A DNA stretch of 63,230 nt, counting the filler, from Bipalium vagum (lineage: Eukaryota), in assembly GCA_037834085.1 (NCBI GenBank). It is 3 parts of 3 records of this genome, joined end to end, with 100 filler letters (N's around TTAATTAATTAA, not from the genome) between each part and the next. Parts side by side here need not be neighbours in the genome. Positions count along the whole stretch, not along the records: positions 16,597 to 43,502 come from JBBMKC010118761.1; 2 more parts are not named here. The stretch is one strand, 5' to 3'. Under the pieces are notes generated by a model. It saw nothing but the letters and a program-made list of their open reading frames with translations, made no database searches and was not told the origin of the DNA. Position 1 is the stretch's first letter, and each line of letters starts with the position of its first letter. This document shows positions 18,633-42,117 of this stretch, one piece after another. A program made the translations under genes and the position numbers.

Positions 18633-18652
18633 AGCTGACTAGGCAGCCACCA
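18633..18652 (+). promoter_or_regulatory. Putative UGA-CUAG stop-codon readthrough signal (copy A)
   Basis: AGC TGA CTA GGC AGC CAC CA. The frame continues as LGSHHIEEYL (Ulp1 'WL...I..YL'). Confidence 0.7.
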
Positions 18653-19499
18653 TATCGAGGAGTACCTGCGATCGAAAATCCAAGACTCAAACACCATATT
18701 CATAAAGCCCGGACCAGCCATCGCCCTTTCCCAGGGGAAAATCGAATCAACAAAATGGGACTGTGGCAAAAAATCATTTGGCCCATCCATTGAAAGTCCA
18801 ACCACTGGATGGTCTTCCTAGCCGATCGCGATTTTGGCAAATCACTACTCCTCGATCCAGCCTCTCTCACGCTTGACGACAACCAACTTAACCTATTTAA
18901 CCTACTCAATACCGTGATCAATAAAGTATGCTGTCCTCTAGACCCTTCACCAATTGAACCAACTGTCCCTCTACCATTGCAAGGACCTGGCTTTGACTGT
19001 GGATACTATATCGTCCAATATGCAGTGGACTTTACAACAACACGCAGAACTTCACCGCTCCAGATATTGACACAATTAAATCTGAAATCACGAAAATTGT
19101 TGGATACCAGATCAAAGAAGCCTAATAGCAAAACAACTGGACGACAGACCCATTAGCTATTGAAAGAAGCCATACTTCTTCTCACAGACTCCTCGGCCAA
19201 CACAACTGATATACTTAATCGTGCGCAGCAGGCAACAGCAGACCTATTTCCCTCCAGATTCTCAAACAACAAAAAGAAAACGCCGGCCCACCAGGAAATA
19301 GCAAATAACAACAAGTCTGCATATAGCCTGAGACAATATTATGAGAAAAATCCAAAGGATGCCTTCAATTCGATCCTCCCAAATAGCCGTCCTTCATCAT
19401 TTCCAACAATTGATGATATTATCAAACACTTTTCAACGACACTCCTCCGCCAATTGCCAGAGACTTACTCATTAACATCCCATCATATCCAACCAGCTC

Positions 19500-21032
19500 T
19501 TTACTTAACCCAATCAGCCCATCTGAAATCATTGCTGCCATCAAATCAACATCAAAATCTGCCCTAGGCTCCGATGGCATAACATATGAGGACTGGCAGA
19601 ACATCGACCCAGAAGCAGAATTTCTCACGGCCTTTTTCAATTATATCATCATCACTAAAAACATTCCAACACAATGGCAAACCTTTAAAACGACGCTCAT
19701 ACTAAAACCAAGCAAAGATGCATTCTCCCATATGATGCCATCTTGGAGACCAATCGCAGTGCTCAACACCAGTTACCGAATCTTTGCCCTAATTATCAAC
19801 AACAGAATCCTGGACTGGGCCAAAACCGGCCCAGTAGAAACGAAAAAGCATTATTTTCAGACAATGGCTGCTCTGAATATAATGCAATCATCAACGGGAC
19901 TGTTGAATATGCGAAATTCAACAAATAAGAGTTTCATACATGCTTCATGGACATCGCAGAAGCATTTCCATCAATTCCGCACCAATTAAATTGGGAAACT
20001 CTTCGCAAATCTGGACTACCAACAACGGACACTGATTTCATTAAAACAATATACCAACATAACTCTACACATTTTCAATGTCACCATATAACAACGCCGA
20101 CCATTAACATCAATAAAGGTGTCAAACAGGGCTGTCCACTCTCCATGACACTCTTTTGCCTCTGCATCAACTTCCAAATTCGCGCTATGGAGGGAATCAG
20201 CCCAAAACTAAAGATCTTTGACACTGATCTCTCATGCCTTGCGATAGCTGATGATCTTGTCATTTTGGCACCTACTTTCAACGATCTCCAGAACCACCTT
20301 AATATCCTAACACAACTGACGAATGCAATCCATCTAAAGTTCCACCCACACAAATGCCGTTATATCAGCATAAACTCCAACCAATCCAACCAACTCCAGA
20401 TCTATGAAGAATCCCTACCAACTGTCGACTCTGATCACATATATACGTATCTTGGCGTAGTCCATGGGGCGGATCTACGTACTGATACGGACAAAATCCT
20501 GAAGAAAAATACAGAGGACTTTAAATATATTATTAACTCCGACTTACATCCGGCACAAATGATACACGCCTATAAATCTTTTATCCACTCTAGACTACCT
20601 TTCCACCTGGAGAATAGAGTGGTGGATACTCTCACACTCACATCACCTCATGCTAGGCAATCTAGTAGTAGAGAAAAATCCCTCGGATACGATGAGATCC
20701 TGCGGCACATGATCAGAAACATCACTGACTCTCATCGTCTCCAAAGTACATACATCTACGCACCTACAGCTCTCGGAGGACTCCAAATAACAACAGCTTA
20801 CGACGATTATCACATCTGCAGTATCGTCCAAGCACTCCGACTCCTCACTAGCACCGACAACGCTCTAAGGAACTTTGTGAAAAACCACCTTCAACACACC
20901 ATCCACATCCGCAAAGAAACTGACTCCACCGAAATATCTATCAATGAACGGATGCTCATCTGGCTGAGCGATCGATTAATCATCAAGTCTCAACCTGGTG
21001 GTCAAAAGTCAGAAAAAGCTGTAGGAATCTGA
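19500..21032 (+). pseudogene. Reverse transcriptase domain of copy A (frameshifted)
   Basis: Motifs GSDGITY, SWRPIAVLNTSYRIF, DIAEAFPSIPH, GVKQGCPLSMTLF, AIADDL, HKC, YTYLG and LGGL. Confidence 0.93.
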
Positions 21033-21163
21033 GAAAATTGAAGATAGACTGTGATTTCTTCAATCACAATGGATAAATCCACCTCAAAATCGTATACCAA
21101 ACCTCAGACACTAAAACGACTTCTCAAATTTTCAAAAGAGAAAATATTCTTGAAACTACCGGA

Positions 21164-21955
21164 ATGTTACATGAAGCAGTAGCGATGGCCTATTATCGCG
21201 AATGGAAATCTCACAAGTCCCAGGAGTTGTTGGTACCAGTATTCGCACTGAGTATCAAATCCAACTTGATCCTCAACAAATTCCATCTTCCTCCATACAT
21301 CTGGAAATGGCTGTTGAAAGCCAGAAATAACAACCTGGGACTAAATTATCGAACCTTCAATCTGGTCAAATCTGCAAATATTCTCTGTAGGCACTGTAGA
21401 ACATTTCCAGAATCCCAGGCGCATGTCCTGAATCATTGCGCCTTGAGACCATTCATGCCCACCATCAAGCATAATGCCGTTCTCAACAAACTTGTCAGCC
21501 TTTTAAGAAAATATGGCTACGACGTAGATGTGGACGTTGTACCCAAAGAATCCGATTCCAACCTCAGACCAGATATCTTCATCAGACTGCCAAAAGAAAA
21601 GAAAATTCATATAATTGACGTAAAGGTTCCATACGATTCCGCTGAAAACTTCCAAAACTGCAGACACAGCAATGCCGCTAAATACCAACCAATGGTAACG
21701 GAAATCAGTGCCAAAACAAGATTAGAAATATCGTTGGACGTCATCAACGTGGGATCTCTTGGTTCGTGGAACCCAGCCAACGACCTTGCACTCACGAAAA
21801 TAGGCCTCAGCAAGGATCAAATCCAACAGACAGCCCACCAATGTCTCGTTGCAGCAGTCACCGAATCCTATCACTCCTTCCTGGTATATGTCACTGCCCC
21901 ACCAGGCTCTACTATTGTCCATCATCAGCCAACAACAACATCACACACCAAATAA
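21164..21955 (+). CDS. CCHC knuckle plus restriction-like endonuclease (RLE) of copy A
   Basis: CRHC..ESQAHVLNHC, KHNAVL, LRPDI...IIDVKVPY...AKY, and VGSLGSW. Confidence 0.93.
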   Translation: MLHEAVAMAYYREWKSHKSQELLVPVFALSIKSNLILNKFHLPPYIWKWLLKARNNNLGLNYRTFNLVKSANILCRHCRTFPESQAHVLNHCALRPFMPTIKHNAVLNKLVSLLRKYGYDVDVDVVPKESDSNLRPDIFIRLPKEKKIHIIDVKVPYDSAENFQNCRHSNAAKYQPMVTEISAKTRLEISLDVINVGSLGSWNPANDLALTKIGLSKDQIQQTAHQCLVAAVTESYHSFLVYVTAPPGSTIVHHQPTTTSHTK

Positions 21956-22792
21956 CCCGTCTCCGTGTTGTGATGTGTTTTTGAGAGTATTCATATTATC
22001 TTATTGTAATTTTATCTTTATTATAATCCTCTATATTTCATTATTATAATGCCCCATTTATTATACCTTGTATATATCCATCCGTGTACATGTGGTTTTT
22101 CCCATTACACCATGTATATATTTATACATCCAAAATCCATTAAAATCATACTATTTTTACTAATTAATTCCGCAAGTGCATCTGATCCTATCTCTTTTAC
22201 TGATAGGTTTGCCTTGCCTGCATTATGTATATATAAAAAATTGTAATTAATTTTATATAGTGTAAATTTCTGTAAATTATTCTCGACTGTGTATATTCTT
22301 TTTTTAACGATTTGGGTGAACTTTCCCTTATATAACTTTTTAACTTGTAAAAAATCCAGAAATGTCACTCAAAATCCCATTGTATTTATTTTAAATAAAA
22401 AAGAAATTCGCGGTTGTTCCACCGGAATATTCTTTAAATGCCATTATAGTGCCCTTTTTATGTATGGTGTATATTTTTGTATGCTTGCTTTTGAAACTTT
22501 TGTTTGAGTGTGGGGGTTGTCTGAGTTATGCTACTCCAGCCTTCAGCTGTCGTGTTGACACGTTCCAAAATTATTTAATTTATAACGGTTGTTGAGGGAT
22601 CAGCTGAAACTGATACTCACTCCCCGTCCCAGAGTGATTATCTTGCATTTACTTTGTTTAGATTTCACCCTTGGCCCGGAGAGAGGACGGAAGATACGGT
22701 TTTTCTAGAATATGGACTTCAATTTGACATGGGATGCTCTGCACCGTGTTTGTAATGTCATAAAATTGAATAAAATTTTTCAAAACCAAAAA

Positions 22793-22818
22793 CCGCTCTT
22801 CTCAGTGGATACACCGAT
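22793..22818 (+). ncRNA. U2: Degenerate U2 snRNA fragment (nt ~41 onward) at the 3' junction of copy A
   Basis: CCGCTCTTCTCAGTGGAT follows the same AATTTTT-AAAACCAAAA element end that precedes the better U2 match at 25291. Confidence 0.55.
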
Positions 22819-23369
22819 CAATTCCGAACCGAAATGAACTTCGATCTTCGAAATCGCTCCGAAGACTCCCGAACAACGTGTGCATGGAAACAGTCCTCTT
22901 TAGGACTAATTTCGATTGTTGAACAAAAAATGGGTGCTGTGGTCTGTCCTCTGATGACTGGAAGTTTACGCAGTACTAAATCTGGTACAGTTTCTCATTT
23001 TCTATCGGATGAAACTGTTTCCAGATTTTCTCGCAAGAGGTTCGCCGCCGTGGATGGGTGCCAAGATGGCGCCAAACTACCGAAATTGATGTCAGAGACT
23101 TCGACTCCGACAATGCTGTGCCAGGTACCATTGGGTGCCTTTCCCAAAGCTGGTCGAATCGATACGCTAAAGACTCCAATCCGGCGAGAACCAAAGTCCC
23201 TGGAAGACTTTAAACTCCTCAGACAATTCAACCGCATTTCCATATGCGGAAATTCGGACACTTCCAATGGCGACAAAACATTGAATTCGACTCCGACCAC
23301 GAAAAATGTCACAGCACTTTGTAGATCTCGCCTAGATCTTTCAAATGCTGTTACGGAATCTGGATAATG

Positions 23370-25290
23370 CACCTTCTGAACAACGAATGGACAAAGAGCA
23401 AGAAAAATCTATATCACCAAAACAACAACCAACCAATCCAAAGCCAAATCAAAGTCCAAAACCATCCCACAAGCCGGACAATCGTAAATATGCTCCGAAC
23501 TACAACGTACCAAAATACACCAAGGCGAATTGTCCCAGACCGGACCTCATTGGTCAAGAAAGATTTATTTTCGCAGGATGGCCACCTCTCAATGGGCAAA
23601 ATTCGAGCATGTTCAGAGCCACATATAGAAAAATTTCAGTCAACAAGAAAAACATGCCACTCCTAATCGACTACCGATACAATCCGGACATGGAGAAACG
23701 AAAAATAATTGAATTTGGCTTCGCACCGCCCAAAACAACCATCGTGAATTCAAACAAGAAACAACCTGAAAACCAACCAATCTCAAACTCGGTCACCGTT
23801 CCAGAACCTCTATCGCAACAATTACTACCACCACAGCCAATGGAGGTTGATCTGGAGCCATTTCCGCTTCCACCTGAACAGCAAGACGACATCATCATTA
23901 TTGAAGACTCCACGACAGCACCAGAAGAAAAAGATGATGACGATATAATTCCTCCTCCGCCAGCATTTAGATCCACCATTGTTACCCAGACCAGCATTGA
24001 AACGAGAGAAATTGGCACACAAACTGATGAAGACAAAAACACGGAAATCTCGCCAATAACCCATCGAAAACCTATAAAAAGAAGAAAGACTTTCTTCAAT
24101 CGCACCAACCCGGAAGAATCAGAAGATAATATCTCCGTCATTTCCATCGCCTCATCCAGATTATCAACCGACAGTGCGAGGCCCCTAATGATGGAAATTA
24201 GATCCATGCCACTTCCACCGGCTCTTCCACAATATCAACCTGAAGCTAACACCGACTATGACTTCACCTCAATAAATGACAATGATATCGAGCTAGGCAT
24301 TCCAAGACCATCCACCGAGCTACCAGAATCCTGCAACACCACCATCAACCTAGATACAATAAATTTCTTTGCTGGCGCACTGGATAACACTCAAGATGAA
24401 ACCCTTGCAACATTCACCTCAATCGATCGAATCGCCTGCAATGTATGCAAAAAAGTTTTTTTCTCACGTGTAAATAATTGACCGTTGATAGTCTGGAAAA
24501 AAAAACCGACTATCAACTTGTATATATTACCACTTTTAATTCTATTGTACAAATCTTGGTTGTACACTCCATTCCTCACTTATACATTTTCCTTACTGTT
24601 TTTCTTTCCTCTGTATAAAAAATCAAACTCCCTATAGTTTTATATCGTCTTTCCTGGTATAAAACCCTAGGACCATCTAAAATCAAATCTCCTTTAAATT
24701 GTTTATATAGTTTCAATATCACCTTTTGTACATTTTTATATATTGTATTTATTGTATATATTCTTCCTTTTTAACACTTTGGGACCACACTACAAATATT
24801 AATCTCATCCAACAACCTTCAATTTTCAAACCTAAAGCCACTCAAAATCACTTTTTCACACCATTAAACTTAGTAACCTTAAAGATGTTTCACTGAAGGT
24901 TTACTAATAAGACCTAGTGCGCTTTTTATTGGGTTGTATTTGTACATTTTTATCCATCCGTATTATGATTGATGCCTTGTGTACTACGCGTCTCATAATA
25001 TCAAATGTTACTGTCGTGTTTTCACCCCGTTTCTAAAATCACCACCAACTTTACACATGAAACCAGTACTCTCTCTGCCGATAGTAAGCAACAATGTGCT
25101 TTGTCCTAGAGCCTTATAAATATGAATTTATTCAATTTAGACGGACTTCTGTGGACCTGCCTTTGCCTTGGGATTTGACGAGTGGAACAGTCAAAATGTT
25201 GCAGAAAATTGTGTATATAACTTGTGTAATATGCCTCTGGCATCTTTGTACTGCGTGTTATATTCTAAATACAATTTTTGAAAACCAAAA
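23370..25290 (+). mobile_element. Utopia-like copy B: N-terminal ORF part joined to a 3' UTR (internal deletion)
   Basis: ORF 23345-24481 is homologous to copies A/C/D/E and stops at the first finger (CNVC). 24900-25290 shares TAGTGC..TTTTAT, CTGTCGTGTT, GGACTTC and AATTTTT-AAAACCAAAA with the 3' UTR of A. Confidence 0.85.
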
Positions 25291-25318
25291 CTGTTCTTCT
25301 CAGTTTAATCTCTGGGAC
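25291..25318 (+). ncRNA. U2: U2 snRNA fragment (3' of the branch-point recognition sequence, stem IIa) at an element 3' junction
   Basis: CTGTTCTTCTCAGTTTAATCTCTGGGAC versus canonical U2 CTGTTCTTATCAGTTTAATATCTGATAC. The changes keep stem IIa pairing (TCTCAG/CTGGGA). Confidence 0.85.
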
Positions 25319-25437
25319 AAAGCACAAAAAAGAAAAGTCTTGGGCGTCCGTCTACTACAGGTCGTCTTAGCCGCGAAATCAGTGGCCCTCCGGGGGTTAA
25401 AGTATCGGGTCGTAGGGGCCAGTTCTCAGCGGAAGTG

Positions 25438-26100
25438 TAGCTATGATCAAAAAAAGGTAAAATGATCAAAATGTGGTAAAACTATTCGTTATGTCAGCAT
25501 TTTGCCCTTTCTACGCTTAGTGAAGGGTCACCCCTCGATATCTCCTGCTGCTCGGCGACTCCCGACCGACCTACCATGTTTGACCGACAATCCTATGATC
25601 CTGTGGCACAGCCTGCTGAAGGTCTCTGATGTCCTGGACGCATTGGATGCCCTATGGACCCCGCCTAGGGCCAGAGGTGACATTTATCCAAATTTTTGCA
25701 ACTTTATTACTATTGACATTGATGGTGACCTTTTAATTGTAAATATTTATATGTTAACCACTTTTGTGTATTTGAATGTTGTATTTCCTTCCCCTAAACT
25801 CGGCCCTTCTGGCCAAAATTTCCACTTTTATCTATATTATACGGTATATAAGGCTCACTACCAAAATTCTGCCCATATTTTTACTCCACTGCCTACATCA
25901 CCCGTTTCTTGACCGCTCTCCCTTCTTCTGCATCCTTCTAAAATATCACCTTCCATCTCTCTGTCCTTTTCCTATTCTAAATACCAATGTATAAGAGTCT
26001 TTTTCGCCCTTAAAAATCTAAAAATTTATATATATTATTTTCTTTATGTAATTTTTTACCAAAATAAAAAGTCTCAGATCCCGGCCCAAATTTGTACAAT
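25438..26100 (+). mobile_element. U2 5' fragment followed by the 5' end of a Utopia-like copy
   Basis: TAGCTATGATCAAAA at 25438. ORF 25502-25912 aligns with 42601-43293 (WHSL..V...LDAL.ALWT.PRA.GD; PS.KLGP.GQN). Confidence 0.75.
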
Positions 26101-26244
26101 TATAAAAAATATTTAAAATTCTGATTACTATGGTACAAAAATTATTAAAATCCATGGCCGACGTCAAAAGATATGAGGCTTTTAATTTTCGAATATTTAC
26201 TAATTATAATCTAAATAACTCTAAGATTATACTTATTTCTTACG

Positions 26245-26655
26245 TCTCGTGAATTTATCCCCACCTGGTTTCCGCAGTCTTCGGCCCCTTCTCCTTCATC
26301 TGTAACCCGGCCTTCCACGCCTGTTAATCCTTTTCCTACTCCCTGTAAGAAACATGTATCCTTTAAGGAGTTTGTCCTGAAAGGCCCTGGGAAGAGCAAC
26401 TCTCCTGTTGCGCCACGACCCTCGGAACCAACAAGAACACCACAACCGAAGGGTCCGAGTCCAATAACTGGAAAACGGATTTTACCAGTTCATGACAAAG
26501 TACAACGGTCAATGGAACAGGAGAGGGCCCTCCCTGCTGAGGACTATTTAGCAAAATTTGCCCTCAGCCCTCCTAGGAGATGAGTGAAACGTCTCCACCC
26601 TAATGACATTGCCTTAACCGCAAATCCTGGCCGCATTGTTTGCAAAGGCTTTACA
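26245..26655 (+). repeat. ~410-bp near-identical duplicate of 38430-38840
   Basis: Direct alignment shows only scattered substitutions. Confidence 0.95.
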
Positions 26656-29600
26656 AAAACCTTCGGGAAAAATATAGTTTATGTTCAAATTATGAGCGGG
26701 GGGTAATAGTGGAGCGAGCACTCCCCATGGAAGCTGGCACTAATCCCCAGCTCTCCATTGGCCCGATTTTGTATCTCATTTTTAATAAGTGTATAAAAGT
26801 AGTTCTCAATATAATTATATATATGTATATTTCTTGTATATATATTACCAACATACACTTAAACAACGTGTACAATGCGTTGTCCTTGGCATCTCTGGTC
26901 ACAAGGACCAAATGTCAAATTATTGCCGATGGGGCTGCCAAGAATTATTTAGTTAACTAGTTTAGTTAACTAGCCTTACTAAAAGTTATACCACTTCAAA
27001 ATAAATGCCTTTTGCCATATCTGAGACAAAAAACTCTATCCTTTTTAACAACATATTAATAAATGACCGCCGCAATTGCAATCTTAATAATGTATTATAT
27101 ATTTTTAATTATAATATTACCCAGATGGACTGCACTGACTCCCAGCCATCTGTTCCAGGGCCACACCCCCAAAATTTCACGAAATTTCTCCCGATTTTAA
27201 TGACTTTTTTTACCAAAACCTACAGGAAAAATCGAATTCCCTGTTATAATTATTCGCGGGGGGGTGAAATGGAGCGCGATCTCCCCATGGGAGCTGGCAC
27301 TTATCCCCAGCTTCCCATTGGCCCATGTTATATTGTAATGCTTCAATGTATAAAAGTAGTTATTCATATATTTATTTATATTATAACCTACTATATTAAT
27401 ATACATTTAAACAACGCGTATAATGCGTTGTACATGGCATCATTGGTCACGAGGACCAAATGTCAGATAGTAGCCGATGGGGCGAACAAAGACTTTAGGT
27501 GTTACGTACAGGATAAGTCGACCCTATCGTATTTAGAGGTTTTAACAAAAACGGTAAGGGGATATGATAGGCGGCTTTATGAATTAGTCCCAATCGAACC
27601 AGTAGGGGCCACCAACCAACAACCACGGCCAACTCCGACCCCTACTGGCAAAAATAATGGCGCCATTAAGCACACAGGCCCAAAAAATTGGCTTAAAAAT
27701 CAAAAAAGTCACTCAAAATCGGCCACCATCAAAGACTTGATAGGAATGATTGAGGACTTACGGAGCGATATTAAGCGAGGAAAAGAAGAAGGCGATAGGC
27801 AAAGCGAGACGGTAGAGATAAAAGAAAAAGTTAAGTTAACGAAGGATAAGTATAAGGGCCCCAGCCTTACCATCGAGGCCACCAACGGGGATAGGAAGGT
27901 GACGGTTACAGGAGAAGAAGGATGGACCGTCGTTGGCAGAAGAAACCGCCAGCAAATCACCATCAGAACCAGCACAAACGGCAAGATCAACAACCGCCGA
28001 ATATAATCCAAAGGCCGAAGAATCCTCAACAGCCAGGCAAAAGAAATACTAAGAAAAAGACCACAAACCTGCTCGAATCCAACAAGAACAAAACAGACAA
28101 GAAAGTTTCAAACCAACTACCGTCCAACATTGAGCAACCACAATTGCCATCAAATACCAAGCAAATAACCGAAAACACGAAGCCAGATCCAACGCATAAG
28201 CCGAACAATTCCAAAACGGCTCCAAATTATAACATCCCCAAATACAATCACGAAAACTGCCCAAGACCGGACTTAATTGGGCAGAAGAGATGGATCTTTG
28301 CCGGCTGGCGCCCAATACACGGGCAAAACTCCAATATGTTCCGGGCAACATATCGGGAGATAAAGGTAAATCGTGTAAACATGCCCCTCCTGGTGGACTA
28401 CCGGTACAATCCGGATATGGAAAAACGTAAAGTAATCGGTTTTGGCTTTGCCCCGCCTGCAAAACCCATTGTACAGAAAAACCAAGTGGAACCAAATCAG
28501 TCAACCACCACTATCATCGAACAAACAACACAAACACAACCACTTGACACAATCATTGGATCACCACAAGAAACAATCACAGAGCAGCAATTGATGGAGG
28601 TCGACCTCGATGCCGAACCTACCTACACTATCGAGGATGAATATTTCCCGCCTCCGCCGGCTGAGGAAGATGAAGTCACAATCCTTGACGAACCAATGCC
28701 ACAAGATGACGAGGATGATGAAATCAATCCTCCTCCGCCAATGTTCAGATCCACCATTGCAACACAAACAATGATTGAAACGAGAGATTTCGGCACCCAG
28801 ACTATCCAAATGAACACCATCGAAATATCTCCACATGTCACCAGAAAGCCTCTTAAACGCCGAAAAACAATGATAACCCAATTCAATGAAAATAACTCTG
28901 ATGATGATGCATCTATTATATCAGTCGCGTTCTCCAGGAACTCATCATCAAACAACGCTCGACCGCTAATCCAAACAACACTCAAAACCATCAATCCACC
29001 TGCCTCAACATCAAACAATGTCTACGCTACCAATCCCGGCTGTGATTCACTCTCAGACCTTGATTCTGAAATTGAATTAAATGAAACGATATCACAACCA
29101 ACCACCAACGTTGAAGACATAGCGGAATCCTGTAATGGCTCCATGGATTTGAATGCCATTAATTATTTTGCAGGGGCAATTGACAATACGGACACAATTG
29201 CAACCTTTAAAGCCTACAATTCCCTAACGTGTAACTATTGTAACAACAAATACACCTTCAACAATGGCAAATCCTGTGGTTTCGACGCCCACCTTCTCAA
29301 CAACCACCAAATAAAACAAACACCGGATTCCATGTACCGATGCATCTGTGGCCAGGCAATTAGTAGGAAAAACTTGCCCTCGCACATCAGCTCACACATC
29401 AGAGCCACAATGCCAACATCCACCGACGTCTGCGACATTCCGCAGACTTGGAGCAAAGCTGACTAGGCAGCCACCAGATAGAGGCCTATCTCAGGACCAA
29501 AATTACCATCAAGAACCATATTTATATCAGACCCGGTCCTGCGATAGCCCTATCTCAAGGAAAGATTAAAGATTTTTATGAAATCTTTCCTTTTCATCTA

Positions 29601-29930
29601 CTTGGCGAATGGCAGAAAATCATGTGGCCAATACATTGGAAATCACATCACTGGCTCATCTTCCTTGCCGACCGTACCACCAGAAGAACATTTTTACTCG
29701 ATCCACAACAACCAAACCTTGATGAAGCCCAATTGGACCTTTTTTGCCTCCTCACAAACATCGTAAACAAAATTGGCGCACCGCTTGACCCAGATCCACT
29801 TGAAATGACCAAACCAGACTACCAGCCAATTCAAACAACACTCAACGACTGTGGATATTTCATCCTGCAATACGCCATTAAATTAGTCCTAAAAAACCAT
29901 CTTTTGCTGTTTTTTCCATGACAGAGAAGA
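26655..29930 (+). mobile_element. Short 5' fragment (26655-26940) plus Utopia-like copy C (N-terminal ORF, fingers, Ulp1; no RT)
   Basis: ORFs 27005-28006 and 27922-29466 are joined by a deletion frameshift. TGA-CTAG at 29460, then WPIHWKSHHW...QTTLNDCGYF. Confidence 0.9.
29457..29476 (+). promoter_or_regulatory. Putative UGA-CUAG readthrough signal (copy C)
   Basis: AGCTGACTAGGCAGCCACCA. A 10-nt deletion upstream relative to copy E shifts the ORF-track frame. Confidence 0.65.
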
Positions 29931-29932
29931 TG

Positions 29933-30173
29933 GTTCTTACCAGATTTCCCGGAGAAGATCTTATACAACCAACCAATCAAAATCGACTACCCTTTGGAAG
30001 AACATCTTCGAATTCCAACTCTGCGAATCCTGGTCGGATTCCAACGCCCGACCCATCTCCGGAAAGCCCTCGTCGAGACGATTCCGAGGCAATGCCCAGA
30101 TCCGCGGTACCACTCGCGGAACCGTGGGTCAAAACTGCTCCAGAAGATCCCGAGTGCCACAGTGTCGATGCCA
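29933..30173 (+). repeat. ~240-bp near-identical duplicate of 34407-34647
   Basis: Direct alignment shows one visible mismatch. It spans a Ulp1-truncation/GC-rich filler junction. Confidence 0.95.
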
Positions 30174-33100
30174 TAGCTATGATCAAAAGTGAACCAGCCA
30201 ATCAGCTTCAAGCTATTGATTTTATCGATTTCCTATTGGCTCACATAGGAGCCAACCAGACACCGATTTCAATTAGAAGATACAAATTCAACCAAATGCT
30301 GAATATTGAAATTTTGGACTTCCAATTCTCCGTGGATATGCCCCAGATCTCCGGAAGATTTTTGCTGCCCGACGATTGGGCTATGCCCCAGCGTAGCGTG
30401 GAAGAAATTTCTCTAAATTTTGAGAAATTTTTTGGAAGCCGAAAAATATGTTGCATGTGGCTTTTATCCCTTGCTAAGGGAGTTTTGCCACATGTCAAAT
30501 GTGGTAATGTTATTCAATTTGCAACCCGCCCTCCGCTTTGCTATTCAGGACCCGACAACGCCATAAATGCAGGAAATTCACCATGTCAATCCCGACCGAC
30601 ATTCCCGGAACATCAATCTTGCTCACCCCGGCTTCCCTGTAAGGAAGCGTCTGGGGAGTCCTATGGTCGTCTCGACGGCCGTGGGCAAGCCGAGTTGACC
30701 GGTGGAAAGTCAACAGAAGGTGATTTGAATAACTTTTTGCTGAATAATCGTGTTTTCCAATATTGTAATAGAATTTCTTATTTTAATACCCCCCTTAATA
30801 ATTTAATCGTTGATTTATATAGATTTGACACCAACGAATTCATCTACGATGAATTCATCACAAAATTTAAGCTAAACTCTAAGCTTTTCATTAAAGTTCT
30901 TAAATTTATTAATTACAAAATAGTAAAAATTTTAAACTGCGAATTTTTAATTATTTTCAACGTTCTTGGTGTCAAATCAAAGCAAAATTTCCAGACTATT
31001 TATTGTACTATTAAAGACTGTAATGCGTGCGGTCTTTCTTATATAAATCTAATTTTTAACGCATATTTAAATTCTTACTTAAACAATAAATTTTACGGTT
31101 TTTTAATTCTCGATTTTAGCCCTAAATTTTTACTCTATATAATAGAGAATTTTTTTCTCTATTATACGATAATTTTAAATAATTTATTGAGTGATTTTAC
31201 CCAGAGATATTACGTCTCAAAAATTCAACAAAATCTACTTAAACAAAATCAAGTAATATCTCTGGGTGAATTACTCCATTTTGAACTTTATACTGAGGCG
31301 TCCACCGTTATCCTGGAGACCGGAATTGTGCTATTTAGTACAATTTCAACGGTGGACTTTCTTTTAAGACCATCCCGAGCTAATTCCATCGCTCAGATAA
31401 ATAGTTATTTAATACCTAAAATTGCCAGTTTAGTTAGAAATTTACCAAAATTTCTAACTAAGTTATTTTCAAATTTTTTCCATTTTCTGCCTGCCTTCAG
31501 TATTTCTATTTCTCTTAGCCCAGGGCTTATGTTACATCATTTTAAAGGCCGGACGATCCCCTTTTATAAAAATATAACATCTAAAATTGATCGCCGCCTG
31601 ATAAAATGTTCTTCAATTTCAAAAATTATCTGTTTTGACACTCCTAGACCTAAATATTCCAAAACTTTAAACACTCTTTTAGTTAATGACCGCCGCATTT
31701 ACAGTTTTAATACTTTATTATATAATTCTAATTATTATAATTACCAGATGGTCTGCACTAACCTCCAGCCATCTTCTCCAGGGCCAAACCCCCGTATTTT
31801 CAATGTTTTTTCCCTGAATTTAACACCTCTTTTCACCAAAACCTTCGGGAAAAATCCTATTTATTGTTTCAATAATGCGCGGGGGGGGTGAATTGGAGAA
31901 TGATCTCCCCATGGGAACTGGCACTTATCCCCAGCTTCCCATTGGCCCATTTTATTTTATCATCTCTCAATGTATAAAAGTATTCTTCCATTTATTTATG
32001 AATGTTATCGCTTATTATACTAAAATACATTTACACAACGCGTATAATGCGTTGTACATGACATCTTTAGCCACCAGGGCTAAATGTCAGATAATAGCCG
32101 ATGGGGCAAATAAAGATTTTAGATGCTACGTTCAGGATAAGTTGACCCCATCGTATTCTGAAGTGTTAACGAAGACTGTTAGGGGGTTTGATGGGCGGCT
32201 CTATGAGTTAGTCCCAATTGAACCAGTAGGGGCCACCATCCAACAATCACGGCCAACTCCGACCCCTACTGGCAAAAATAAAGGCGCCGTTAAGAACATA
32301 GGCCCAAAACATTCATCTAAAAAATTTAATAGTCACTCAAAATCGGCCACTATCCAAGACCTGATAGGGATGATTGAGGACTTAAGAAAAGAGCTTAAGA
32401 AAGGGAAAGAAGAAAAAGGCGCTAGGCAGAGCGAGATGTTAGGAAATAAAGAAACAGTTAAGGTATCGGAGAGTAAGTATAAGGGCCCCAGCCTTACCAT
32501 CGAGGCCACCAACGGGGGTAGGAAAGTGACGGCCTCGGGCGAGGAGGGATGGACCGTCGTTCGTGGACAGAAGAAAAGCTGGCAGAAGAAGCCGCCAGCC
32601 AACTACCACCAGAGCCAAAACAAAAGGCAGAATCAAAGACTGAAATATCCTCCAATACCACCAAATAAAAACAAGGACCATCAATCAAACAAAACCCAGC
32701 AGAAGATCAAAACCAATCCAATTCAAAAGAACAAAGTATCCGAAAAAGATTTGAATCAAAAACCTCCAATTATCGAACAGAAGAAACCAACAACTAATAA
32801 AAATTTGCTAACTGACAACACCATAAAGGAGCCAACGCATAAGCCGAATAACTCAAAAACGGCTCCAAACTACAATTTCCCAAAGTATAACCGGGAAAAC
32901 TGTCCAAGGCCGGATCTAATTGGACAGAAAAGATGGATTTTCGCTGGCTGGCGCCAAATACACGGGCAAAAATCGAACATGTTCCGGGCGACGTACCGAG
33001 AAATAAAAGTTAATCGTCGCAATATGCCCCTCCTCGTGGACTACCGGTACAACCCGGACATGGAAAAACGAGGTATTATCGGCTTCGGTTTTGCTCCGCC

Positions 33101-34465
33101 CGTAAAATCAAACACCACCAAAAATCAAGAAAATCCTGCGGAGCCCACCATCAATCCTGGCAAGAAAACAATGTCAACACTACCACTCGAAACAATAATG
33201 GAGCCGGAAACACAACTAATGGAAGTCGATCTCGACGCCGAGCCGACTTGCTCCATTGAAGAGGACTATTTCCCACCTCCACCGGCTGAAGAGGATGATA
33301 TCATTGTCCTTGACGAATCCATACCTGAAGAAGACAATGAAAATGACGATGATGACATCATTCCTCCTCCACCGATGTTCCGCTCCAACATCGCAACGCA
33401 GACTGACAGAAACGAGGGAGATGGCCACACAAACTGGCGATATACTAACCGAAATCTCACCGATCGCCCCTCGCAAACCAATCAAACGGCGAAAAACCTT
33501 TTTCAACCGGACCAATCCAGACGAGTCCGACGACAATATTTCTATCATATCAGTCGCCTCCTCTCGCATATCCACAGCGAGTGCACGACCTCTCATGGCG
33601 GAAATTAGATCGATTGCACAACCACAACCACCAACTCATAACCCCTACGAAGACAATATCCACTGTGACTCTCTGGATGAAGAGGAAACACTAATCACTA
33701 ATGATGATAACATTCCGGAACTAATTTTCCCACCTGTTGAACCAGGAAATCCTAATGATAATTGTGGGGGCCGGATCAATCTAGACTCAATCACTTTCTT
33801 TGCCGCTGCAAACAACGAGACGTCAATTGCCACTGCCGAATCCTGGACCAAAATGATTTGTAACTTATGCGATTCAAAACCCTCCTTCACCATGAAAGAT
33901 TTCAAGCACAAGGGCCTAGATCAACATCACAAAAAGGCACATGGGTTACAACCAAATAAGCAATCCAGATACCGATGTTTTTGCGGGATCACCCTCACAC
34001 GTGACCTGTTCTATAGTCATCTCCAATCACATGGCAATGAACCAACTACAAACTCAAACGACATCACGGACATCCCTATCACATCGAGTGACAGGGAGGC
34101 CAGCTGACTAGGCAGCCACCACCTAGAAGCATACTTGCGGGCCAACATCAATAACCCATCAACCATATACATTCGGCCCGGACCCGCAGTTGCGCTCACA
34201 CAAGGCCGTATTGACCATTTCTTCGAAATTTTCCCATTCAACAAGCTTGGAGGATGGGAAAAAATCATCTGGCCCATCCACTGGAAGTCCAACCACTGGA
34301 TGGTCTTCCTAGCCAATCGAAAACGAGGCATCTGTTTCCTCTTGGACCCGGCGAATAAGAATCTCAATGAGGAACAAATGCAACTTTTCCTCCTTCTGCA
34401 CACCATGTTCTTACCAGATTTCCAGGAGAAGATCTTATACAACCAACCAATCAAAATCGACTACC
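30172..34465 (+). mobile_element. Utopia-like copy D: complete 5' half from the U2-derived leader to a truncated Ulp1
   Basis: CATAGCTATGATCAAAAGTG (U2-like) at 30172 opens a 570-codon frame. It continues via 31875-33608 and 33256-34107 (two small frameshifts), TGA-CTAG at 34105, then in-frame Ulp1 at 34108-34460. Confidence 0.9.
34102..34121 (+). promoter_or_regulatory. Putative UGA-CUAG readthrough signal (copy D)
   Basis: ORFs 33256-34107 and 34135-34662 are in the same frame and separated only by this TGA. Confidence 0.75.
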
Positions 34466-34659
34466 CTTTGGAAGAACATCTTCGAATTCCAACTCTGCGA
34501 ATCCTGGTCGGATTCCAACGCCCGACCCATCTCCGGAAAGCCCTCGTCGAGACGATTCCGAGGCAATGCCCAGATCCGCGGTACCACTCGCGGAACCGTG
34601 GGTCAAAACTGCTCCAGAAGATCCCGAGTGCCACAGTGTCGATGCCAGTCGACAATTTA

Positions 34660-37600
34660 TGAAGATCAATGTTGCTCACCCCGGCTTCTCTGTAAGGAAG
34701 CGTCTGTGGAGTCCTGCGGTCGTCTCGGCGGCCGTGGGCAAGCCGAGTTGGCCGGTGGAAAGCCAACCGGAGGTGATTTTGCTAAATTTACTAATTATAA
34801 TGGAATTATTCAATTTTCAAGTTATAATTATATTTTAAATGCCCCCCAATCTAATTTTATCACCAATCTATATCAATTTGGCACCAAGGAATTCATCTAT
34901 GATGAATTTACCACCACATATGGCCCAATTCTTAAGATTTTATTTAAAATAACTAAGTTTTTTAATTCTAAAATAGCAAAAAATTTATTTTGTCAGTTTT
35001 CGTCAGAATTTAACGTTCTTGGTGCCAAATTGAAGATAAAGTTTGGCATTATTTATATTATAATAGAAGGCTGTAATGCGTGCGGTCTTTATTATATTAA
35101 AATGAATTTTTATTTAGGCCATTTTAACCGATTTGAATGTGCGCCTAACAACGCATATTTAAAATCGGATTATAACAAACACAAGACCAAGCCAGAACCA
35201 ACGCACAAGCCGAATAATTCAAAAACGGCCCCGAATTATAATTTTCCTAAATATAAACGGGAAAACTGTCCAAGGCCAGATTTAATTGGGCAGAAGAGAT
35301 GGATCTTCGCCGGATGGCGCCCAATACACGGGCAGAACTCGAATATGTTCCGGGCGACATATCGGGAGATAAAAGTAAATCGGCGCAACATGCCCCTCCT
35401 GGTTGACTACCGCTACAACCGGGACATGGAGAAAGGGAAAATTATAGGCTTCGGTTTTGCTCCGCCCGCAAAATCCATTAACAACAAAAATCAAGAAGAA
35501 TCTAATCAGCCAACCATTAATCTCGTTGAGCAGACAATTCCAACGCAACCGCTCGACACGATCCAAGAAATACCGCAAGAAACAATCACGGAGCCGCAAT
35601 TGATGGAGGTCGACCTCGATGCCGAACCGACTTGCTCTATCGAGGACGAATGTTTCCCACCTCCACCGGATGAGGAGGAGGATGTCATACTCCTTAACGA
35701 GCCTCCACCAGAAGAAGACAACGATGATGATGATATCATTCCTCCTCCACCAATGTTCCGATCCACCATAGCAACACAAACGACCATTGAAACAAGAGAT
35801 TTCGGAACACAGACTATGGTAATGAATACAATCGAAATATCTCCACATGTCACCAGAAAGCCCATTAAACGCCGAAAGACAATGCTAACCCAATTCCATG
35901 AAAATAACTCCGATGATGATGTCTCTATTATATCAGTTGCGTCCTCAAGGAATTCATCATCAAACTACGCTCGACCTCTCATCCAAACAACAATCAAGAC
36001 CATCAATCCGCCAGCCTCAACATCAAACAATATCTACGAAACCAATCTCAGACCTTGACTCCGAAAACGATTGAACGAAACAATATCACAACCAACCATC
36101 AACGTCGAAGACATTGCGGAATCCTGTAATGGTTCCATGGATTTGAATACCATTAATTATTTTGCAGGGGCAATCGATAACACCAACACGATTGCCACCT
36201 TCAAGACCTACAACTCATTGTCATGTAACTACTGCAATAAAATTTATACCTTTAACAATGGAAAATCCTGTGGGTTTGACGCCCACCTCCTGAATAACCA
36301 TCAAATGAAACACACCCCAGAATCAATGTACCGGTGTATATGTGGGCAAGCAATAGCCAGAAAAAACCTACCATCACACATTAGCTCCCACATCAGAGCC
36401 ACGATGCCCACATCAACAGAAATCTGCGACATTCCACTCACTGCCGCAGATATCCATCCCAGCTGACTAGGCAGCCACCAGATAGAGGCCTATCTCAGGA
36501 CCAAAATTCCGAACAAAAACCACGTCTACATTAGACCCGGTCCTGCGGTAGCCCTATCACAGGGGTAATCAACACATTCTATGAGATTTTCCCCTTCCAT
36601 AGCCTTGGAGAATGGCAGAAAATAATATGGCCAATACACTGGCAATCCCAGCATTGGCTGATATTCCTTGCAGATCGAACATCCAGACGCGCTTTTCTGC
36701 TCGAACCAATGAAAACGAACCTAGACGAAATGCAGTTAAACCAACAAAATATGCGCTCCTCTCGACCCAGATCCAATTGAGCCAGCAAAACCAGATATTC
36801 AACCACTACAAGGATCTGCACCAGATTGTGGATATTTTATCTCAAAATACGCCATCAACTTCAGCGAGAATAAGGAATTTGAAAACCCAAATGTTGAAGC
36901 CATTCGGGATGAAATTGCACAAATTACAAAGGCCATCTTAAGCACCAGGATCCTAAAGCCAGACAACAAAGAAGAGGCAAAATCAACGCCCCCTATACTG
37001 GCAGAGGCCATCATCAGACTGGACAACCCGAATGACAACATCACAGATATCCTTGACATAGCAAGAAGAGCAACAGCTGACCTATTTCCAGCAAAATATG
37101 CAAAGGCGGCGAAGAAAACACCAGTTCATCAATATATTGAAAAAGAAACAGCCTCGGCCTTTAAACTCAGAGCCCAATATGAGAAAAACCCTAAAGACGT
37201 TTTTCTATCGCTCTTACCAACGAGCAATCCATCAACTCTACCAACTACTGAGGATATTGTGACGCACTTCACCACAACAGCACCGCCACCAATCGACCAA
37301 AATTTTCTACACAATATTCCTAGGCATTCCATTTCCACCATCACAGAGCCAATTCTACCATCAGATGTCGAAACAGCGATCAAAAATACCAACAAATCGG
37401 CACCAGGCCTGGATGGCTTCACATACGCTGATTGGAAGAAAATCGATCCGGAGTTCACGTTTCTTTCCAAACTATTCAACAGAATCATAACGACGAAAAC
37501 CATCCCGGAACAGTGGAAAAATTTCAAAACCACTCTCCTCCTAAAACCGGGAAAAGATGAAAATTCCCATCTCCTATCATCATGGAGACCAATAGCTGTA

Positions 37601-38215
37601 TTAACAACATCATAAAGACTATTCGCTTTGATATTAAACAAGCGTATGCTTGAGTGGATTAAACATCACCAACTTATAAATCGCAATCAAAAGGCCCTTC
37701 TCTCAGACAATGGATGTGCAGAACACAATGCCACCATTAACGGCATTACCAAAGCAGCAAAGCAGGAGAAAAAAGAATATCACATCTGCTTCTTGGACAT
37801 TGCCAAGGCCTTTCCAAGCGTACCTTACCAACTATTATGGCAAACTCTGAACCGATTAGGCGTTTCCGCAGACACGATTACACTCTTCAAAAAGATCTAT
37901 GAAGACAACAAGACCTCCTACGCATGCCAACATTTAACAACAACACCCATCACGATAAACCAGGGAGTCAAATAGGGTTGTCCTCTATCGATAACCCTAT
38001 TTTGCCTCAGCATAAATTTTATGCTTAACAATATCGAACAGACCACGCCAAAACTCACAGCCTTTGGCACTGAATGGAACATCCTCGCGTACGCGGATGA
38101 TATTGCCATCATCGCGCCAACAAACAAATCTCTACAAGCGAAAATTAACACCATCGTAGCCCTTGCAAAAGGAATCAGCCTAAAATTTAGACTCAGCAAA
38201 TGCGGCTATTTCTCC
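34660..38215 (+). mobile_element. Utopia-like copy E (internally deleted N-terminus, fingers, Ulp1, RT; 3'-truncated)
   Basis: Homologous N-terminal blocks, TGA-CTAG at 36464, QGSAPDCGYF, SAPGLDG, SSWRPIA, DIAKAFPSVP, GVK*GCPLS and LAYADD. Confidence 0.9.
36461..36480 (+). promoter_or_regulatory. Putative UGA-CUAG readthrough signal (copy E)
   Basis: CCC AGC TGA CTA GGC AGC CAC CAG ATA GAG GCC TAT CTC (HPS*LGSHQIEAYL). Confidence 0.7.
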
Positions 38216-41379: not shown

Positions 41380-42117
41380 AGTTAAGAAAAATGGAGTAGA
41401 CTATAAGGGCTTTCCATCGAGGCCACCAAATAGGGTAGGAAGGTTACGGCAGTAAACGAAGAAGGATGGACTGTCGTAGGCCCCAATGGAATAAAAAGAA
41501 AAATTCCAAATTCTCAACCAATGATCAACAATTCAAAAGGAAAAACACCGCCAGATCTACTCAAAAACCGAAGGAAAACCCAAAGCCGAATAATATCACT
41601 GAAAAACATCCAACTCATTTCCAGCCATACTCTACTCCAATTGTACCAAATTCAGAACCGACTGTGCCACCTCCAACCTAAAATACTAAGTGTTCCAACT
41701 CACAAACCAAATAATAGCAAGACGGCACCAAATTACAACATTCCAAAATATAGCCGTTTAAATTGTCCAAGGCCAGATCTCATTGGACAAAAACGTTGGA
41801 TCTCTGCAGCGGGGAAACCGATCCATGGCAAAAATTCACACATGTATTGGGCCACCTACCGAGAAGTCACTGTCACCAGAAAGAACATGCCCCTCCTCGT
41901 TCATTACCGATACAACCCCGATATGGAATCCGGCAAAATAGTGGACTTTGTCTTCACCCCACCGCAAAAAATTGAAAATAAGTCAACTGAAAATTCTAAC
42001 ACACTTCATGGCCCACAGCCAAATACAAAACAAGGCCACAAGCCACCACAGAAAGGCCCACAGCCACACACAGCTCCGAACCCATCAGACTCAATTACTC
42101 AACCAAACTCTTTATAA
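41380..42117 (+). mobile_element. Utopia-like copy F fragment (N-terminal conserved domain)
   Basis: EEGWTVV and PTHKPNNSKTAPNYN...CPRPDLIGQKRW...YRYNPDME. The GPQP repeats match copy A. Confidence 0.88.

What the first reader, a model, noticed from the sequence alone, without database searches (positions are those of the whole stretch)
18633..36480. Conserved UGA-CUAG readthrough splits the element into a gag/pol-like two-protein system
Seen: all four copies covering the site (TGA at 18636, 29460, 34105, 36464) share the invariant 20-mer AGCTGACTAGGCAGCCACCA, including synonymous positions. Adjacent codons differ (KES/LEQ/REA/IHP before; HIEEY/QIEAY/HLEAY after). The other stops I noted are copy-specific. 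The TGA sits where Ulp1 proteases have Trp (W-L-x-x-x-x-I-x-x-Y), and in copy D both sides are open in one frame. Known: UGA-CUA(G) is the readthrough context of alphaviruses and several animal genes, Trp is a common insertion, and R2/NeSL/Utopia normally have one continuous ORF. Inference: an abundant ~1300-aa zinc-finger protein plus a minor ~2400-aa protease-RT-RLE fusion. I know of no such recoding described for this clade.
Basis: partly seen in the sequence, partly recalled or inferred. Interest (0 to 1): 0.92.

Follow-up and report, generated by a model that had tools for sequence, protein, structure and literature searches.

The report
Conserved leaky UGA in a retrotransposon
A family of jumping genes keeps one in-frame UGA stop codon, in a known "leaky" sequence context, exactly where its protease domain should have a tryptophan; this most likely lets ribosomes make much zinc-finger protein and a little full-length protease-reverse transcriptase-endonuclease fusion, a strategy I could not find described for this class of element.

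Summary
The 20-mer AGCTGACTAGGCAGCCACCA is exact at all four window sites, and the TGA is in frame in three of four copies; copy B has a 10-nt deletion just upstream.

The TGA is not an inherited defect.
- About 90 further copies in the same genome carry TGA at this codon, and none has TGG.
- Lineages only 41-59% identical in protein keep TGA followed by CTN.
- Two sub-families show dN about 0.35 with saturated dS on both sides of the stop.
- Host tubulin genes and the element's 26 other Trp codons (all TGG) indicate a standard genetic code.
- Twelve of twelve related elements from other public samples also have a single in-frame TGA between ORF1 and the Ulp1-RT-endonuclease ORF. Six have it at this same codon. 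Six have it 30-70 codons upstream and keep TGG at the Trp site.
- The base after the stop is C in 12 of 13 lineages. The true ORF2 terminators are mostly TAA.

No SECIS element, no conserved downstream RNA structure and no plausible intron were found. No RNA data exist for this organism.

Best reading: programmed UGA readthrough (UGA-CUAG/CUN/CGG type), confidence about 0.75, giving a gag/gag-pol-like ratio. Readthrough itself is not demonstrated. The full 20-mer is conserved only in one sub-clade. All four window copies are degraded.

The parts
18633..18652 (+). Invariant 20-mer with in-frame TGA (18636-18638), copy A
   Evidence: Exact match. The TGA ends ORF 18189..18638. Downstream reads LGSHHIEEY in the same frame.
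29457..29476 (+). Invariant 20-mer with TGA (29460-29462), copy B. A 10-nt deletion just upstream shifts the upstream frame.
   Evidence: The mechanical ORF 27922..29466 ends at the overlapping TAG.
34102..34121 (+). Invariant 20-mer with in-frame TGA (34105-34107), copy C
   Evidence: There are 295 open codons before and 184 after the stop (L008), but homology to ORF2 ends after 97 aa.
36461..36480 (+). Invariant 20-mer with in-frame TGA (36464-36466), copy D
17043..18635 (+). Copy A: C-terminal part of ORF1 (aa 449-1022 of the reference copy L036), including the two C2H2-like zinc fingers. It contains frameshifts.
   Evidence: tblastn of L036 ORF1. Zinc-finger motifs at ORF1 aa 943 and 980.
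18639..21955 (+). Copy A: ORF2 (Ulp1-like protease, reverse transcriptase, CCHC + restriction-like endonuclease), broken by several frameshifts, ending at TAA 21953
   Evidence: tblastn ORF2 aa 1-1017 at 18639-21628. C-terminal RLE region at 21323-21892. TAA terminator. Pfam PF02902 and PF00078 on the reference copy.
27812..29897 (+). Copy B: ORF1 aa 451-1015 and ORF2 aa 1-145, then cut off by unrelated repeat sequence
   Evidence: 93% aa identity to L036 in ORF2.
32448..34398 (+). Copy C: ORF1 aa 454-1022 and ORF2 aa 1-97, then cut off by the same unrelated repeat
   Evidence: The 241-nt repeat D12 is 100% identical at 29933-30173 and 34407-34647.
35144..38224 (+). Copy D: ORF1 aa 579-1020 and ORF2 aa 1-596, with frameshifts
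23447..24460 (+). Isolated ORF1 fragment (aa 589-950) of the same family
26251..26673 (+). Isolated ORF1 5' fragment (aa 107-243)
   Evidence: 98% identical to 38430-38729 (D4).
38241..38912 (+). Isolated ORF1 5' fragment (aa 42-261)
41695..41994 (+). Isolated ORF1 fragment (aa 594-694)

Best explanation
The window holds degraded copies of an R2-superfamily (restriction-like-endonuclease) non-LTR retrotransposon of the NeSL/Utopia type. Its coding region is one long frame interrupted by a single UGA.

Most ribosomes terminate at this UGA and release ORF1, about 1000 aa with two C2H2-like zinc fingers at its C-terminus. A minority read the UGA as a sense codon because it sits in the leaky context UGA-CUAG (more generally UGA-C). 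They continue into the Ulp1-like cysteine protease, reverse transcriptase and endonuclease, producing an ORF1-ORF2 fusion of about 2100-2300 aa. The protease may then process this fusion.

In this lineage the UGA replaces the conserved Trp codon of the Ulp1 N-terminal motif (W-L-x-x-x-x-I-x-x-Y). Insertion of Trp by near-cognate tRNA-Trp, the commonest outcome of UGA readthrough, would restore a canonical protease.

Shown here:
- conservation and position of the stop;
- the frame relationship of the two ORFs;
- purifying selection on both sides;
- the leaky context;
- a standard host genetic code.

Inferred: that ribosomes read through, which residue is inserted, the product ratio, and protease processing.
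For: (1) The TGA is exact and in frame, within an invariant 20-mer, in four copies whose flanks are 72% identical.

(2) Genome-wide counts. 48 places match the 20-mer at up to 2 mismatches. 96 places match the 14-mer TGACTAGGCAGCCA at up to 1 mismatch. Of those 96, 90 have TGA, 3 AGA, 1 GGA, 1 CGA, 1 TAA and none TGG.

(3) Copy C206376 has ATG, 1022 codons, TGA and 1018 codons in one frame. Three further copies have open ORF2 frames of 1106-1122 aa beginning at the exact 14-mer.

(4) Between two sub-families at 58% aa identity, dN is about 0.35 and dS is saturated, both upstream and downstream of the stop.

(5) Of ten deeper lineages in the same genome (41-50% aa identity), nine have TGA at the same codon, followed by CTA, CTC or CTT. 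Their following codons vary synonymously.

(6) All 12 related elements from 12 other public samples have a single in-frame TGA between ORF1 and the protease ORF. Six have it at the same codon (next codon CTA, CTC, CTT, CTT, CTG, CAA). Six have it 30-70 codons upstream (next codon CGG, CGG, CGA, CTA, CTA, AGA) and keep TGG at the Trp site. The two groups are separate sides of a tree (SH-aLRT 99 and 96).

(7) The base at +4 is C in 12 of 13 lineages, against a codon-first-base C frequency of 0.19. The inter-ORF stop is TGA in 13 of 13. True ORF2 terminators are TAA in 10 of 16 checked.

(8) The stop column aligns with W in group B.

(9) Standard code. Most of the >150 tubulin matches have no in-frame stop. 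The element has 26 TGG codons and no other TGA.

(10) The first Met after the stop lies 54 residues into the protease, yet the residues between are conserved. They must therefore be translated from upstream.

(11) From established knowledge, not tested here: UGA-CUAG and UGA-CGG/CUA are recognised high-readthrough contexts in animals, fungi and viruses.
Against: - No RNA-seq, ribosome profiling or proteomics exists for this organism, so readthrough is not demonstrated.
- No conserved stimulatory RNA structure was found within 130 nt downstream.
- The extended 20-mer is conserved only in one sub-clade. Its synonymous invariance is explained by readthrough only by inference; another RNA- or DNA-level role is possible.
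- No copy that I could inspect base by base is complete. The best one (L036) has its endonuclease cut about 100 aa early.
- Counts across lineages are not phylogenetically independent.
- The genomic copy set was ascertained with the motif itself. The protein-based survey and remove that bias only in part.
Confidence: 0.75

Rival explanations
1. A-to-I RNA editing converts UGA to UGG (Trp) in part of the transcripts, as at the hepatitis delta amber/W site. The genomic stop would then be removed at the RNA level rather than read through.
For: The stop lies exactly at a Trp codon, one A-to-G change away. No RNA data are available to exclude it.
Against: - No conserved duplex surrounds the site. 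alifold finds only an invariant 4-bp mini-hairpin.
- The edited A would have a 5' G, the least favoured ADAR neighbour (established knowledge, not tested here).
- The six group-B elements have an equally conserved in-frame TGA that is not at a Trp position. Editing to Trp does not explain those.
- The conserved feature across lineages is the base after the stop (C), which is a termination-context signal.
Confidence: 0.05
2. ORF2 is translated separately from ORF1, by termination-reinitiation or by non-AUG or internal initiation just after the UGA, as in SART1 or LINE-1. No fusion protein would be made.
For: Bicistronic translation without readthrough is the known solution in other non-LTR elements (PMC5972666). 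The data do not show a fusion protein.
Against: - The ORFs are always in the same frame, which reinitiation does not require.
- There is no AUG at or near the stop. The first Met comes at residue 33-64 or never.
- The stop is always UGA with C at +4, the leakiest combination, not a stop-start overlap.
- In group A the stop occupies a residue position inside a folded domain's conserved motif.
Confidence: 0.08
3. The UGA encodes selenocysteine, or UGA is a sense codon in this organism.
For: UGA is the codon used for Sec, and for Trp in some variant codes.
Against: - No SECIS or any other Rfam family was found in the window or in five element loci.
- Most tubulin genes of the genome have no in-frame TGA.
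- The element encodes its 26 other Trp residues with TGG and has no other TGA.
- The stop is conserved across samples with GC of 30-43%, presumably different hosts.
Confidence: 0.02
4. The stop is a shared inactivating mutation of dead copies, or a chance-conserved block, with no role in expression.
For: All four window copies are degraded, with frameshifts and truncations.
Against: - dN/dS is far below 1 on both sides of the stop between sub-families.
- The stop is retained across a clade with terminal branches of about 1 substitution per site.
- 13 of 13 lineages use TGA, and 12 of 13 have C next.
- Copy-specific stops elsewhere are scattered.
Confidence: 0.02

Closest known systems
NeSL and Utopia-1_TSP non-LTR retrotransposons (nematodes), R2 superfamily
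   Same: The domain order matches: N-terminal zinc fingers, Ulp1-like cysteine protease, reverse transcriptase, CCHC zinc finger and restriction-like endonuclease (PMC4640811). The RT is nearest to solved R2 proteins.
   Different: Those families are described as generally encoding one protein (PMC4640811). Here, and in 12 relatives, the frame is split by one conserved UGA. No spliced-leader or U2 snRNA gene was detected beside the copies inspected. Placement against reference NeSL/Utopia sequences could not be tested.
Gag-pol expression by stop-codon readthrough in gammaretroviruses (murine leukaemia virus) and nsP3-nsP4 readthrough in alphaviruses
   Same: A single in-frame leaky stop separates an abundant upstream product from a rare fusion that carries the protease and polymerase. 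Alphaviruses use UGA followed by C (established knowledge).
   Different: MLV uses UAG plus a downstream pseudoknot. No conserved downstream structure was found here. The element is a non-LTR retrotransposon. In group A the stop sits inside the protease domain at a conserved Trp, not in a linker.
Cellular UGA-CUAG readthrough genes (for example OPRL1, OPRK1, MAPK10, AQP4, peroxisomal LDHB/MDH1 extensions)
   Same: The short motif is identical, UGA CUAG, with no need for a distal structure (established knowledge; the motif is seen, and in L066).
   Different: Those genes add short C-terminal extensions. Here the extension is more than 1000 aa and carries all the enzymatic domains. Conservation extends 10 nt further (GCAGCCACCA) in one sub-clade.
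Bicistronic non-LTR elements (LINE-1 ORF1/ORF2 unconventional reinitiation; SART1 UAAUG coupling)
   Same: There are two products from one RNA: an upstream nucleic-acid-binding protein and a downstream RT-endonuclease (PMC5972666).
   Different: Those use separate or overlapping frames and a restart at AUG. Here the ORFs are in the same frame, there is no AUG, and the stop is a conserved UGA-C.

Membership tests
RLE-type (R2 superfamily) non-LTR retrotransposon, NeSL/Utopia group | Reverse transcriptase domain of the non-LTR type | tested here: met
   PF00078, E=2.6e-26. The best PDB matches are R2 retrotransposon proteins at E=9e-41, ahead of LINE-1 ORF2p at about 3e-20.
RLE-type (R2 superfamily) non-LTR retrotransposon, NeSL/Utopia group | C-terminal CCHC zinc finger followed by a restriction-like endonuclease (PD...(D/E)xK) | tested here: met
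   CRHCRTQPESQAHVLNHC, then RPDIII...ILDVKV in L036. The complete C-terminus in window copy A (21323-21892) is homologous to that of P0001. This rests on sequence motifs only; there is no structural test.
RLE-type (R2 superfamily) non-LTR retrotransposon, NeSL/Utopia group | Ulp1-like cysteine protease upstream of RT (NeSL, Utopia-1_TSP) | tested here: met
   PF02902, E=3.4e-5. A profile of five elements hits yeast Ulp1 (1euv) at E=2.3e-10 with the H, D and Q...DCG catalytic residues aligned.
RLE-type (R2 superfamily) non-LTR retrotransposon, NeSL/Utopia group | Site-specific insertion in spliced-leader (NeSL) or U2 snRNA (Utopia) genes | tested here: inconclusive
   No Rfam family was found in the window or in L035, L036 or L042-L044. 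The 3' ends are too diverged to define junctions. Target specificity is therefore unknown.
RLE-type (R2 superfamily) non-LTR retrotransposon, NeSL/Utopia group | Phylogenetic placement of the RT with reference NeSL/Utopia sequences | not testable with these tools
   No Repbase or reference NeSL/Utopia sequences were available. The tree contains only unnamed database proteins.
Programmed stop-codon readthrough (UGA-CUA/CGG type) | Two ORFs in the same frame separated by one stop, both under purifying selection | tested here: met
   The same arrangement is seen in 12 of 12 relatives.
Programmed stop-codon readthrough (UGA-CUA/CGG type) | Stop codon identity and 3' context conserved beyond coding need (UGA, then C at +4; CUAG, CUN or CGG) | tested here: met
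   13 of 13 lineages use TGA, and 12 of 13 have C at +4. Codons +1 to +4 are synonymously invariant in the sub-clade, while neighbouring conserved residues use 2-4 codons each. The caveat is shared ancestry.
Programmed stop-codon readthrough (UGA-CUA/CGG type) | Stimulatory downstream RNA structure (needed only by some classes) | tested here: not met
   alifold on 141 nt from six copies found no covarying structure. This feature is not required for the short-motif class.
Programmed stop-codon readthrough (UGA-CUA/CGG type) | Direct evidence of the readthrough product (reporter assay, Ribo-seq or junction peptide) | not testable with these tools
   No RNA run exists for this organism, and no proteomics tool was available.
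Selenoprotein mRNA | SECIS element in the 3' UTR | tested here: not met
   There were no Rfam hits at gathering threshold in five element loci or in the window.

The most novel reading that the evidence does not exclude
An ancient clade of protease-bearing R2-superfamily retrotransposons, found in at least 13 public samples, expresses its enzymes only through programmed UGA readthrough. In one branch the leaky stop has replaced a structural Trp codon inside the Ulp1 protease. Only the near-cognate Trp-inserting event would then give an active protease, so the recoding signal doubles as a fidelity and stoichiometry switch. The invariant 20-mer would be a compact, structure-free, high-efficiency readthrough cassette.
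Probability: 0.45. Interest if true: 0.85.

Novelty: new variant of a known kind. Interest (0 to 1): 0.78.

Why it matters
Non-LTR retrotransposons are known to balance ORF1 and ORF2 output in several ways:
- reinitiation;
- stop-start coupling;
- 2A peptides;
- frameshifting.

I found no report of programmed readthrough for them in the library searched. The one review of this clade describes a single protein.

If confirmed, this would extend the retroviral gag/gag-pol logic to the R2/NeSL superfamily. It would explain why these elements carry a protease. It would also give a natural example of a stop codon standing in for a conserved Trp inside an enzyme fold. The short 20-nt cassette could be useful as a readthrough reporter or tool.

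The finding also matters for annotation. Gene callers split these elements into two genes at the UGA, as seen in every database contig examined.

Tried and rejected
- Variant genetic code: rejected on tubulin genes and the element's own TGG usage.
- Selenocysteine: no SECIS found.
- Splicing across the stop: there is no GT within 30 nt upstream in the reference copy, and the coding motif DIP[LV]T is conserved up to about 8 codons before the stop in deep lineages.
- Downstream stimulatory structure: none conserved.
- Expression, editing or splicing evidence from RNA reads: no RNA run exists. The only run is DNA-like contigs, probably the assembly's own source. Laying it showed no well-supported alternative letter inside the 20-mer, which is not independent evidence.
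Only 321-nt pieces around the site could be taken. The 1106-1144-aa open ORF2 frames are therefore known only from the search table.
- Defining the 3' junction and target site: the 3' UTRs are too diverged.
- Malik & Eickbush 2000 (NeSL-1) is not held. I could not check whether an in-frame stop was noted there.
- The Leu(+1) CTN-versus-TTR argument alone is weak (p about 0.1).
- The organism's identity is coded, so I could not name the host.


Full report
OBSERVATION

The 20-mer AGCTGACTAGGCAGCCACCA occurs exactly four times in the piece, at 18633, 29457, 34102 and 36461, all on the + strand. No near-matches appear at up to 3 mismatches, and none are expected by chance. An alignment of 520 nt around the four sites has 72% mean column identity, with variation mostly at every third base, yet the 20 columns are invariant.

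The TGA closes the upstream ORF in copies A, C and D. Copy B has a 10-nt deletion shortly upstream that shifts the frame.

ANATOMY OF THE WINDOW

tblastn with the best genomic copy shows that the piece is a cluster of fragments of one family, all on the + strand.
- Copy A (17043-21955) holds ORF1 aa 449-1022 plus a frameshifted but complete ORF2.
- Copies B (27812-29897) and C (32448-34398) are cut off after ORF2 aa 145 and 97 by another repeat.
- Copy D (35144-38224) reaches ORF2 aa 596.
- Four isolated ORF1 fragments are also present.

None of these copies is intact.

The reference copy L036 (contig C206376) has an ATG, 1022 codons, the TGA, then 1018 codons in the same frame. ORF1 has no Pfam hit but carries two C2H2-like zinc fingers near its C-terminus. 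ORF2 carries Peptidase_C48 (Ulp1) and RVT_1, then a CCHC finger and a PD...DxK endonuclease motif.

The L036 endonuclease is cut about 100 aa early by unrelated sequence. Complete C-termini exist in window copy A and elsewhere. The RT is nearest to solved R2 proteins. A profile of the protease hits yeast Ulp1 at E=2e-10 with the catalytic residues aligned.

IS THE STOP AN INHERITED DEFECT?

No.
- In the same 440-Mb genome, 48 places match the 20-mer at up to 2 mismatches. 96 places match the 14-mer TGACTAGGCAGCCA at up to 1 mismatch. Of those 96, 90 have TGA and none has TGG. The few exceptions are AGA, GGA, CGA and TAA.
- A protein-based survey, which is not biased by the motif, found more than 150 protease-domain matches. 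Every copy with at least 53% aa identity that includes the domain start also appears in the 14-mer list. Three of these copies have open ORF2 frames of 1106-1122 aa beginning right at the motif.
- Between two sub-families at 58% aa identity, dN is about 0.35 while dS is saturated. This holds for both the last 384 codons of ORF1 and the first 792 codons of ORF2. Both sides therefore evolved under purifying selection while the stop was kept.
- I fetched 321-nt pieces around the site from ten deeper lineages (41-50% aa identity). Nine have TGA at exactly this codon, followed by CTA, CTC or CTT, and one has CGA. The following Gly and Ser codons vary freely.

The deep signal is therefore TGA + CTN. 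The full 20-mer is a sub-clade feature. Within that sub-clade, codons +1 to +4 use a single codon each. Neighbouring conserved residues (E, A, Y, P, G) use two to four codons each.

OTHER ORGANISMS

Database searches gave related proteins from 12 other public samples. I fetched their contigs. In all 12, the gene caller had split the element at a single in-frame TGA.

Six elements (group A) have the TGA at the same codon as here. The next codon is CTA, CTC, CTT, CTT, CTG or CAA.

Six elements (group B) keep a real Trp (TGG) at that position, in the motif xW-F-[TDA]-x-x-D-I. They have the in-frame TGA 30-70 codons upstream. The next codon is CGG, CGG, CGA, CTA, CTA (once as CTAG) or AGA.

In an alignment, the group-A stop column coincides with the group-B Trp. 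In a quick maximum-likelihood tree the two groups form separate sides of a branch, with SH-aLRT 99 and 96 and terminal branches of about 1 substitution per site. This is consistent with one TGG-to-TGA change retained for a very long time.

Across 13 lineages the inter-ORF stop is always TGA. The next base is C in 12 of them, against a first-codon-base C frequency of 0.19. These lineages are not fully independent. The real ORF2 terminators are mostly TAA.

ALTERNATIVES

A variant genetic code is excluded.
- Most of the genome's many tubulin matches have no in-frame stop.
- The element uses TGG for its 26 other Trp residues and has no other TGA.

Selenocysteine is unlikely. No SECIS or any other Rfam family was detected.

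Splicing is unlikely.
- There is no GT within 30 nt upstream in the reference copy.
- Coding conservation runs up to the stop.

Independent initiation of ORF2 is unlikely.
- The first Met lies 33-64 residues into the protease domain, or is absent.
- The residues directly after the stop are conserved.
- The two ORFs are always in the same frame.

A-to-I editing of UGA to UGG cannot be excluded without RNA data. Three points argue against it.
- There is no conserved duplex.
- The 5' G neighbour is unfavourable for ADAR (established knowledge, not tested here).
- The group-B stops do not lie at Trp positions.

No RNA run exists for this organism. Laying the single DNA-like run showed no well-supported alternative letter within the 20-mer, but that run is probably the assembly's own source.

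MECHANISM

The best-supported reading is programmed UGA readthrough of the short-motif class. UGA-CUAG, UGA-CUA and UGA-CGG are recognised leaky contexts in animals, fungi and viruses; this is my own knowledge and was not tested here. It would yield abundant ORF1 and a rare ORF1-protease-RT-endonuclease fusion, analogous to retroviral gag/gag-pol.

In group A, near-cognate decoding of UGA by tRNA-Trp would restore the canonical Ulp1 motif. The extra 10 invariant bases in the sub-clade may tune readthrough within the ribosomal mRNA channel, or may serve another function. This is open.

COMPARISON AND NOVELTY

The domain architecture matches NeSL and Utopia-1_TSP, which are described as generally encoding one protein (PMC4640811). 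Reviews of non-LTR translation list reinitiation, stop-start coupling, 2A peptides and frameshifting, but not readthrough. Six literature searches found no report of readthrough in these elements. The original NeSL-1 paper is not held, so prior notice of an in-frame stop there cannot be ruled out.

I class this as a new variant of a known kind: a known recoding mechanism in a class of elements, and at a position inside an enzyme domain, where it has apparently not been described.

VERDICT

Confidence that this is programmed readthrough is about 0.75. Experimental proof is lacking.

Noticed in passing
window 16597-43502: At least eight fragments of the same retrotransposon family lie in 27 kb, all on the + strand. 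None is intact and they belong to different sub-families (38-93% aa identity to the reference). This looks like a nested or clustered insertion site or a transposon graveyard. No target gene was recognised.
   Followed up: partly
window 29933-30173 and 34407-34647; also L036:7989 onward: A second, unrelated repeat cuts off ORF2 of copies B and C at different residues (aa 145 and 97); it is 100% identical over 241 nt between the two window sites. A second, different stretch of unrelated sequence, seen further downstream of copy B (translation EPTRHRFQLEDT...), also follows the truncated endonuclease of the otherwise open copy on contig C206376. These may be parts of another mobile element that inserts into this family, or a recombination product.
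   Followed up: no
L054 (G000:C194808:11550-11870, minus strand): One deep-lineage copy has CGA (Arg) in place of the TGA, with the frame otherwise conserved. It is a natural stop-less variant. A few decayed copies have AGA, GGA or TAA.
   Followed up: partly
L010 (G000:C119550, minus strand): This copy has an internal ORF1 deletion. It joins the KYKGPSLTIEATNG region, normally about 400 aa upstream, to within a few codons of AGC-TGA, and the 20-mer is retained.
   Followed up: no
G000 genome-wide: The genome gives more than 150 tubulin-domain matches. There are roughly 70 two-exon genes with an intron after about residue 57-63 of the Pfam model. This points to an unusually large tubulin family, uncollapsed haplotypes or polyploidy.
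   Followed up: no
P0018, P0024, P0030, P0033, P0051 (group-B relatives): Several group-B elements match the protease profile in two or three separate stretches. This suggests tandem Ulp1-like domains upstream of the RT.
   Followed up: no
window 18634-18647 and the equivalent in the other three copies: Within the 20-mer, GCUG and CAGC can pair as a 4-bp stem around the loop ACUAGG, placing the stop codon in the stem-loop. All bases are invariant, so there is no covariation for or against it.
   Followed up: partly
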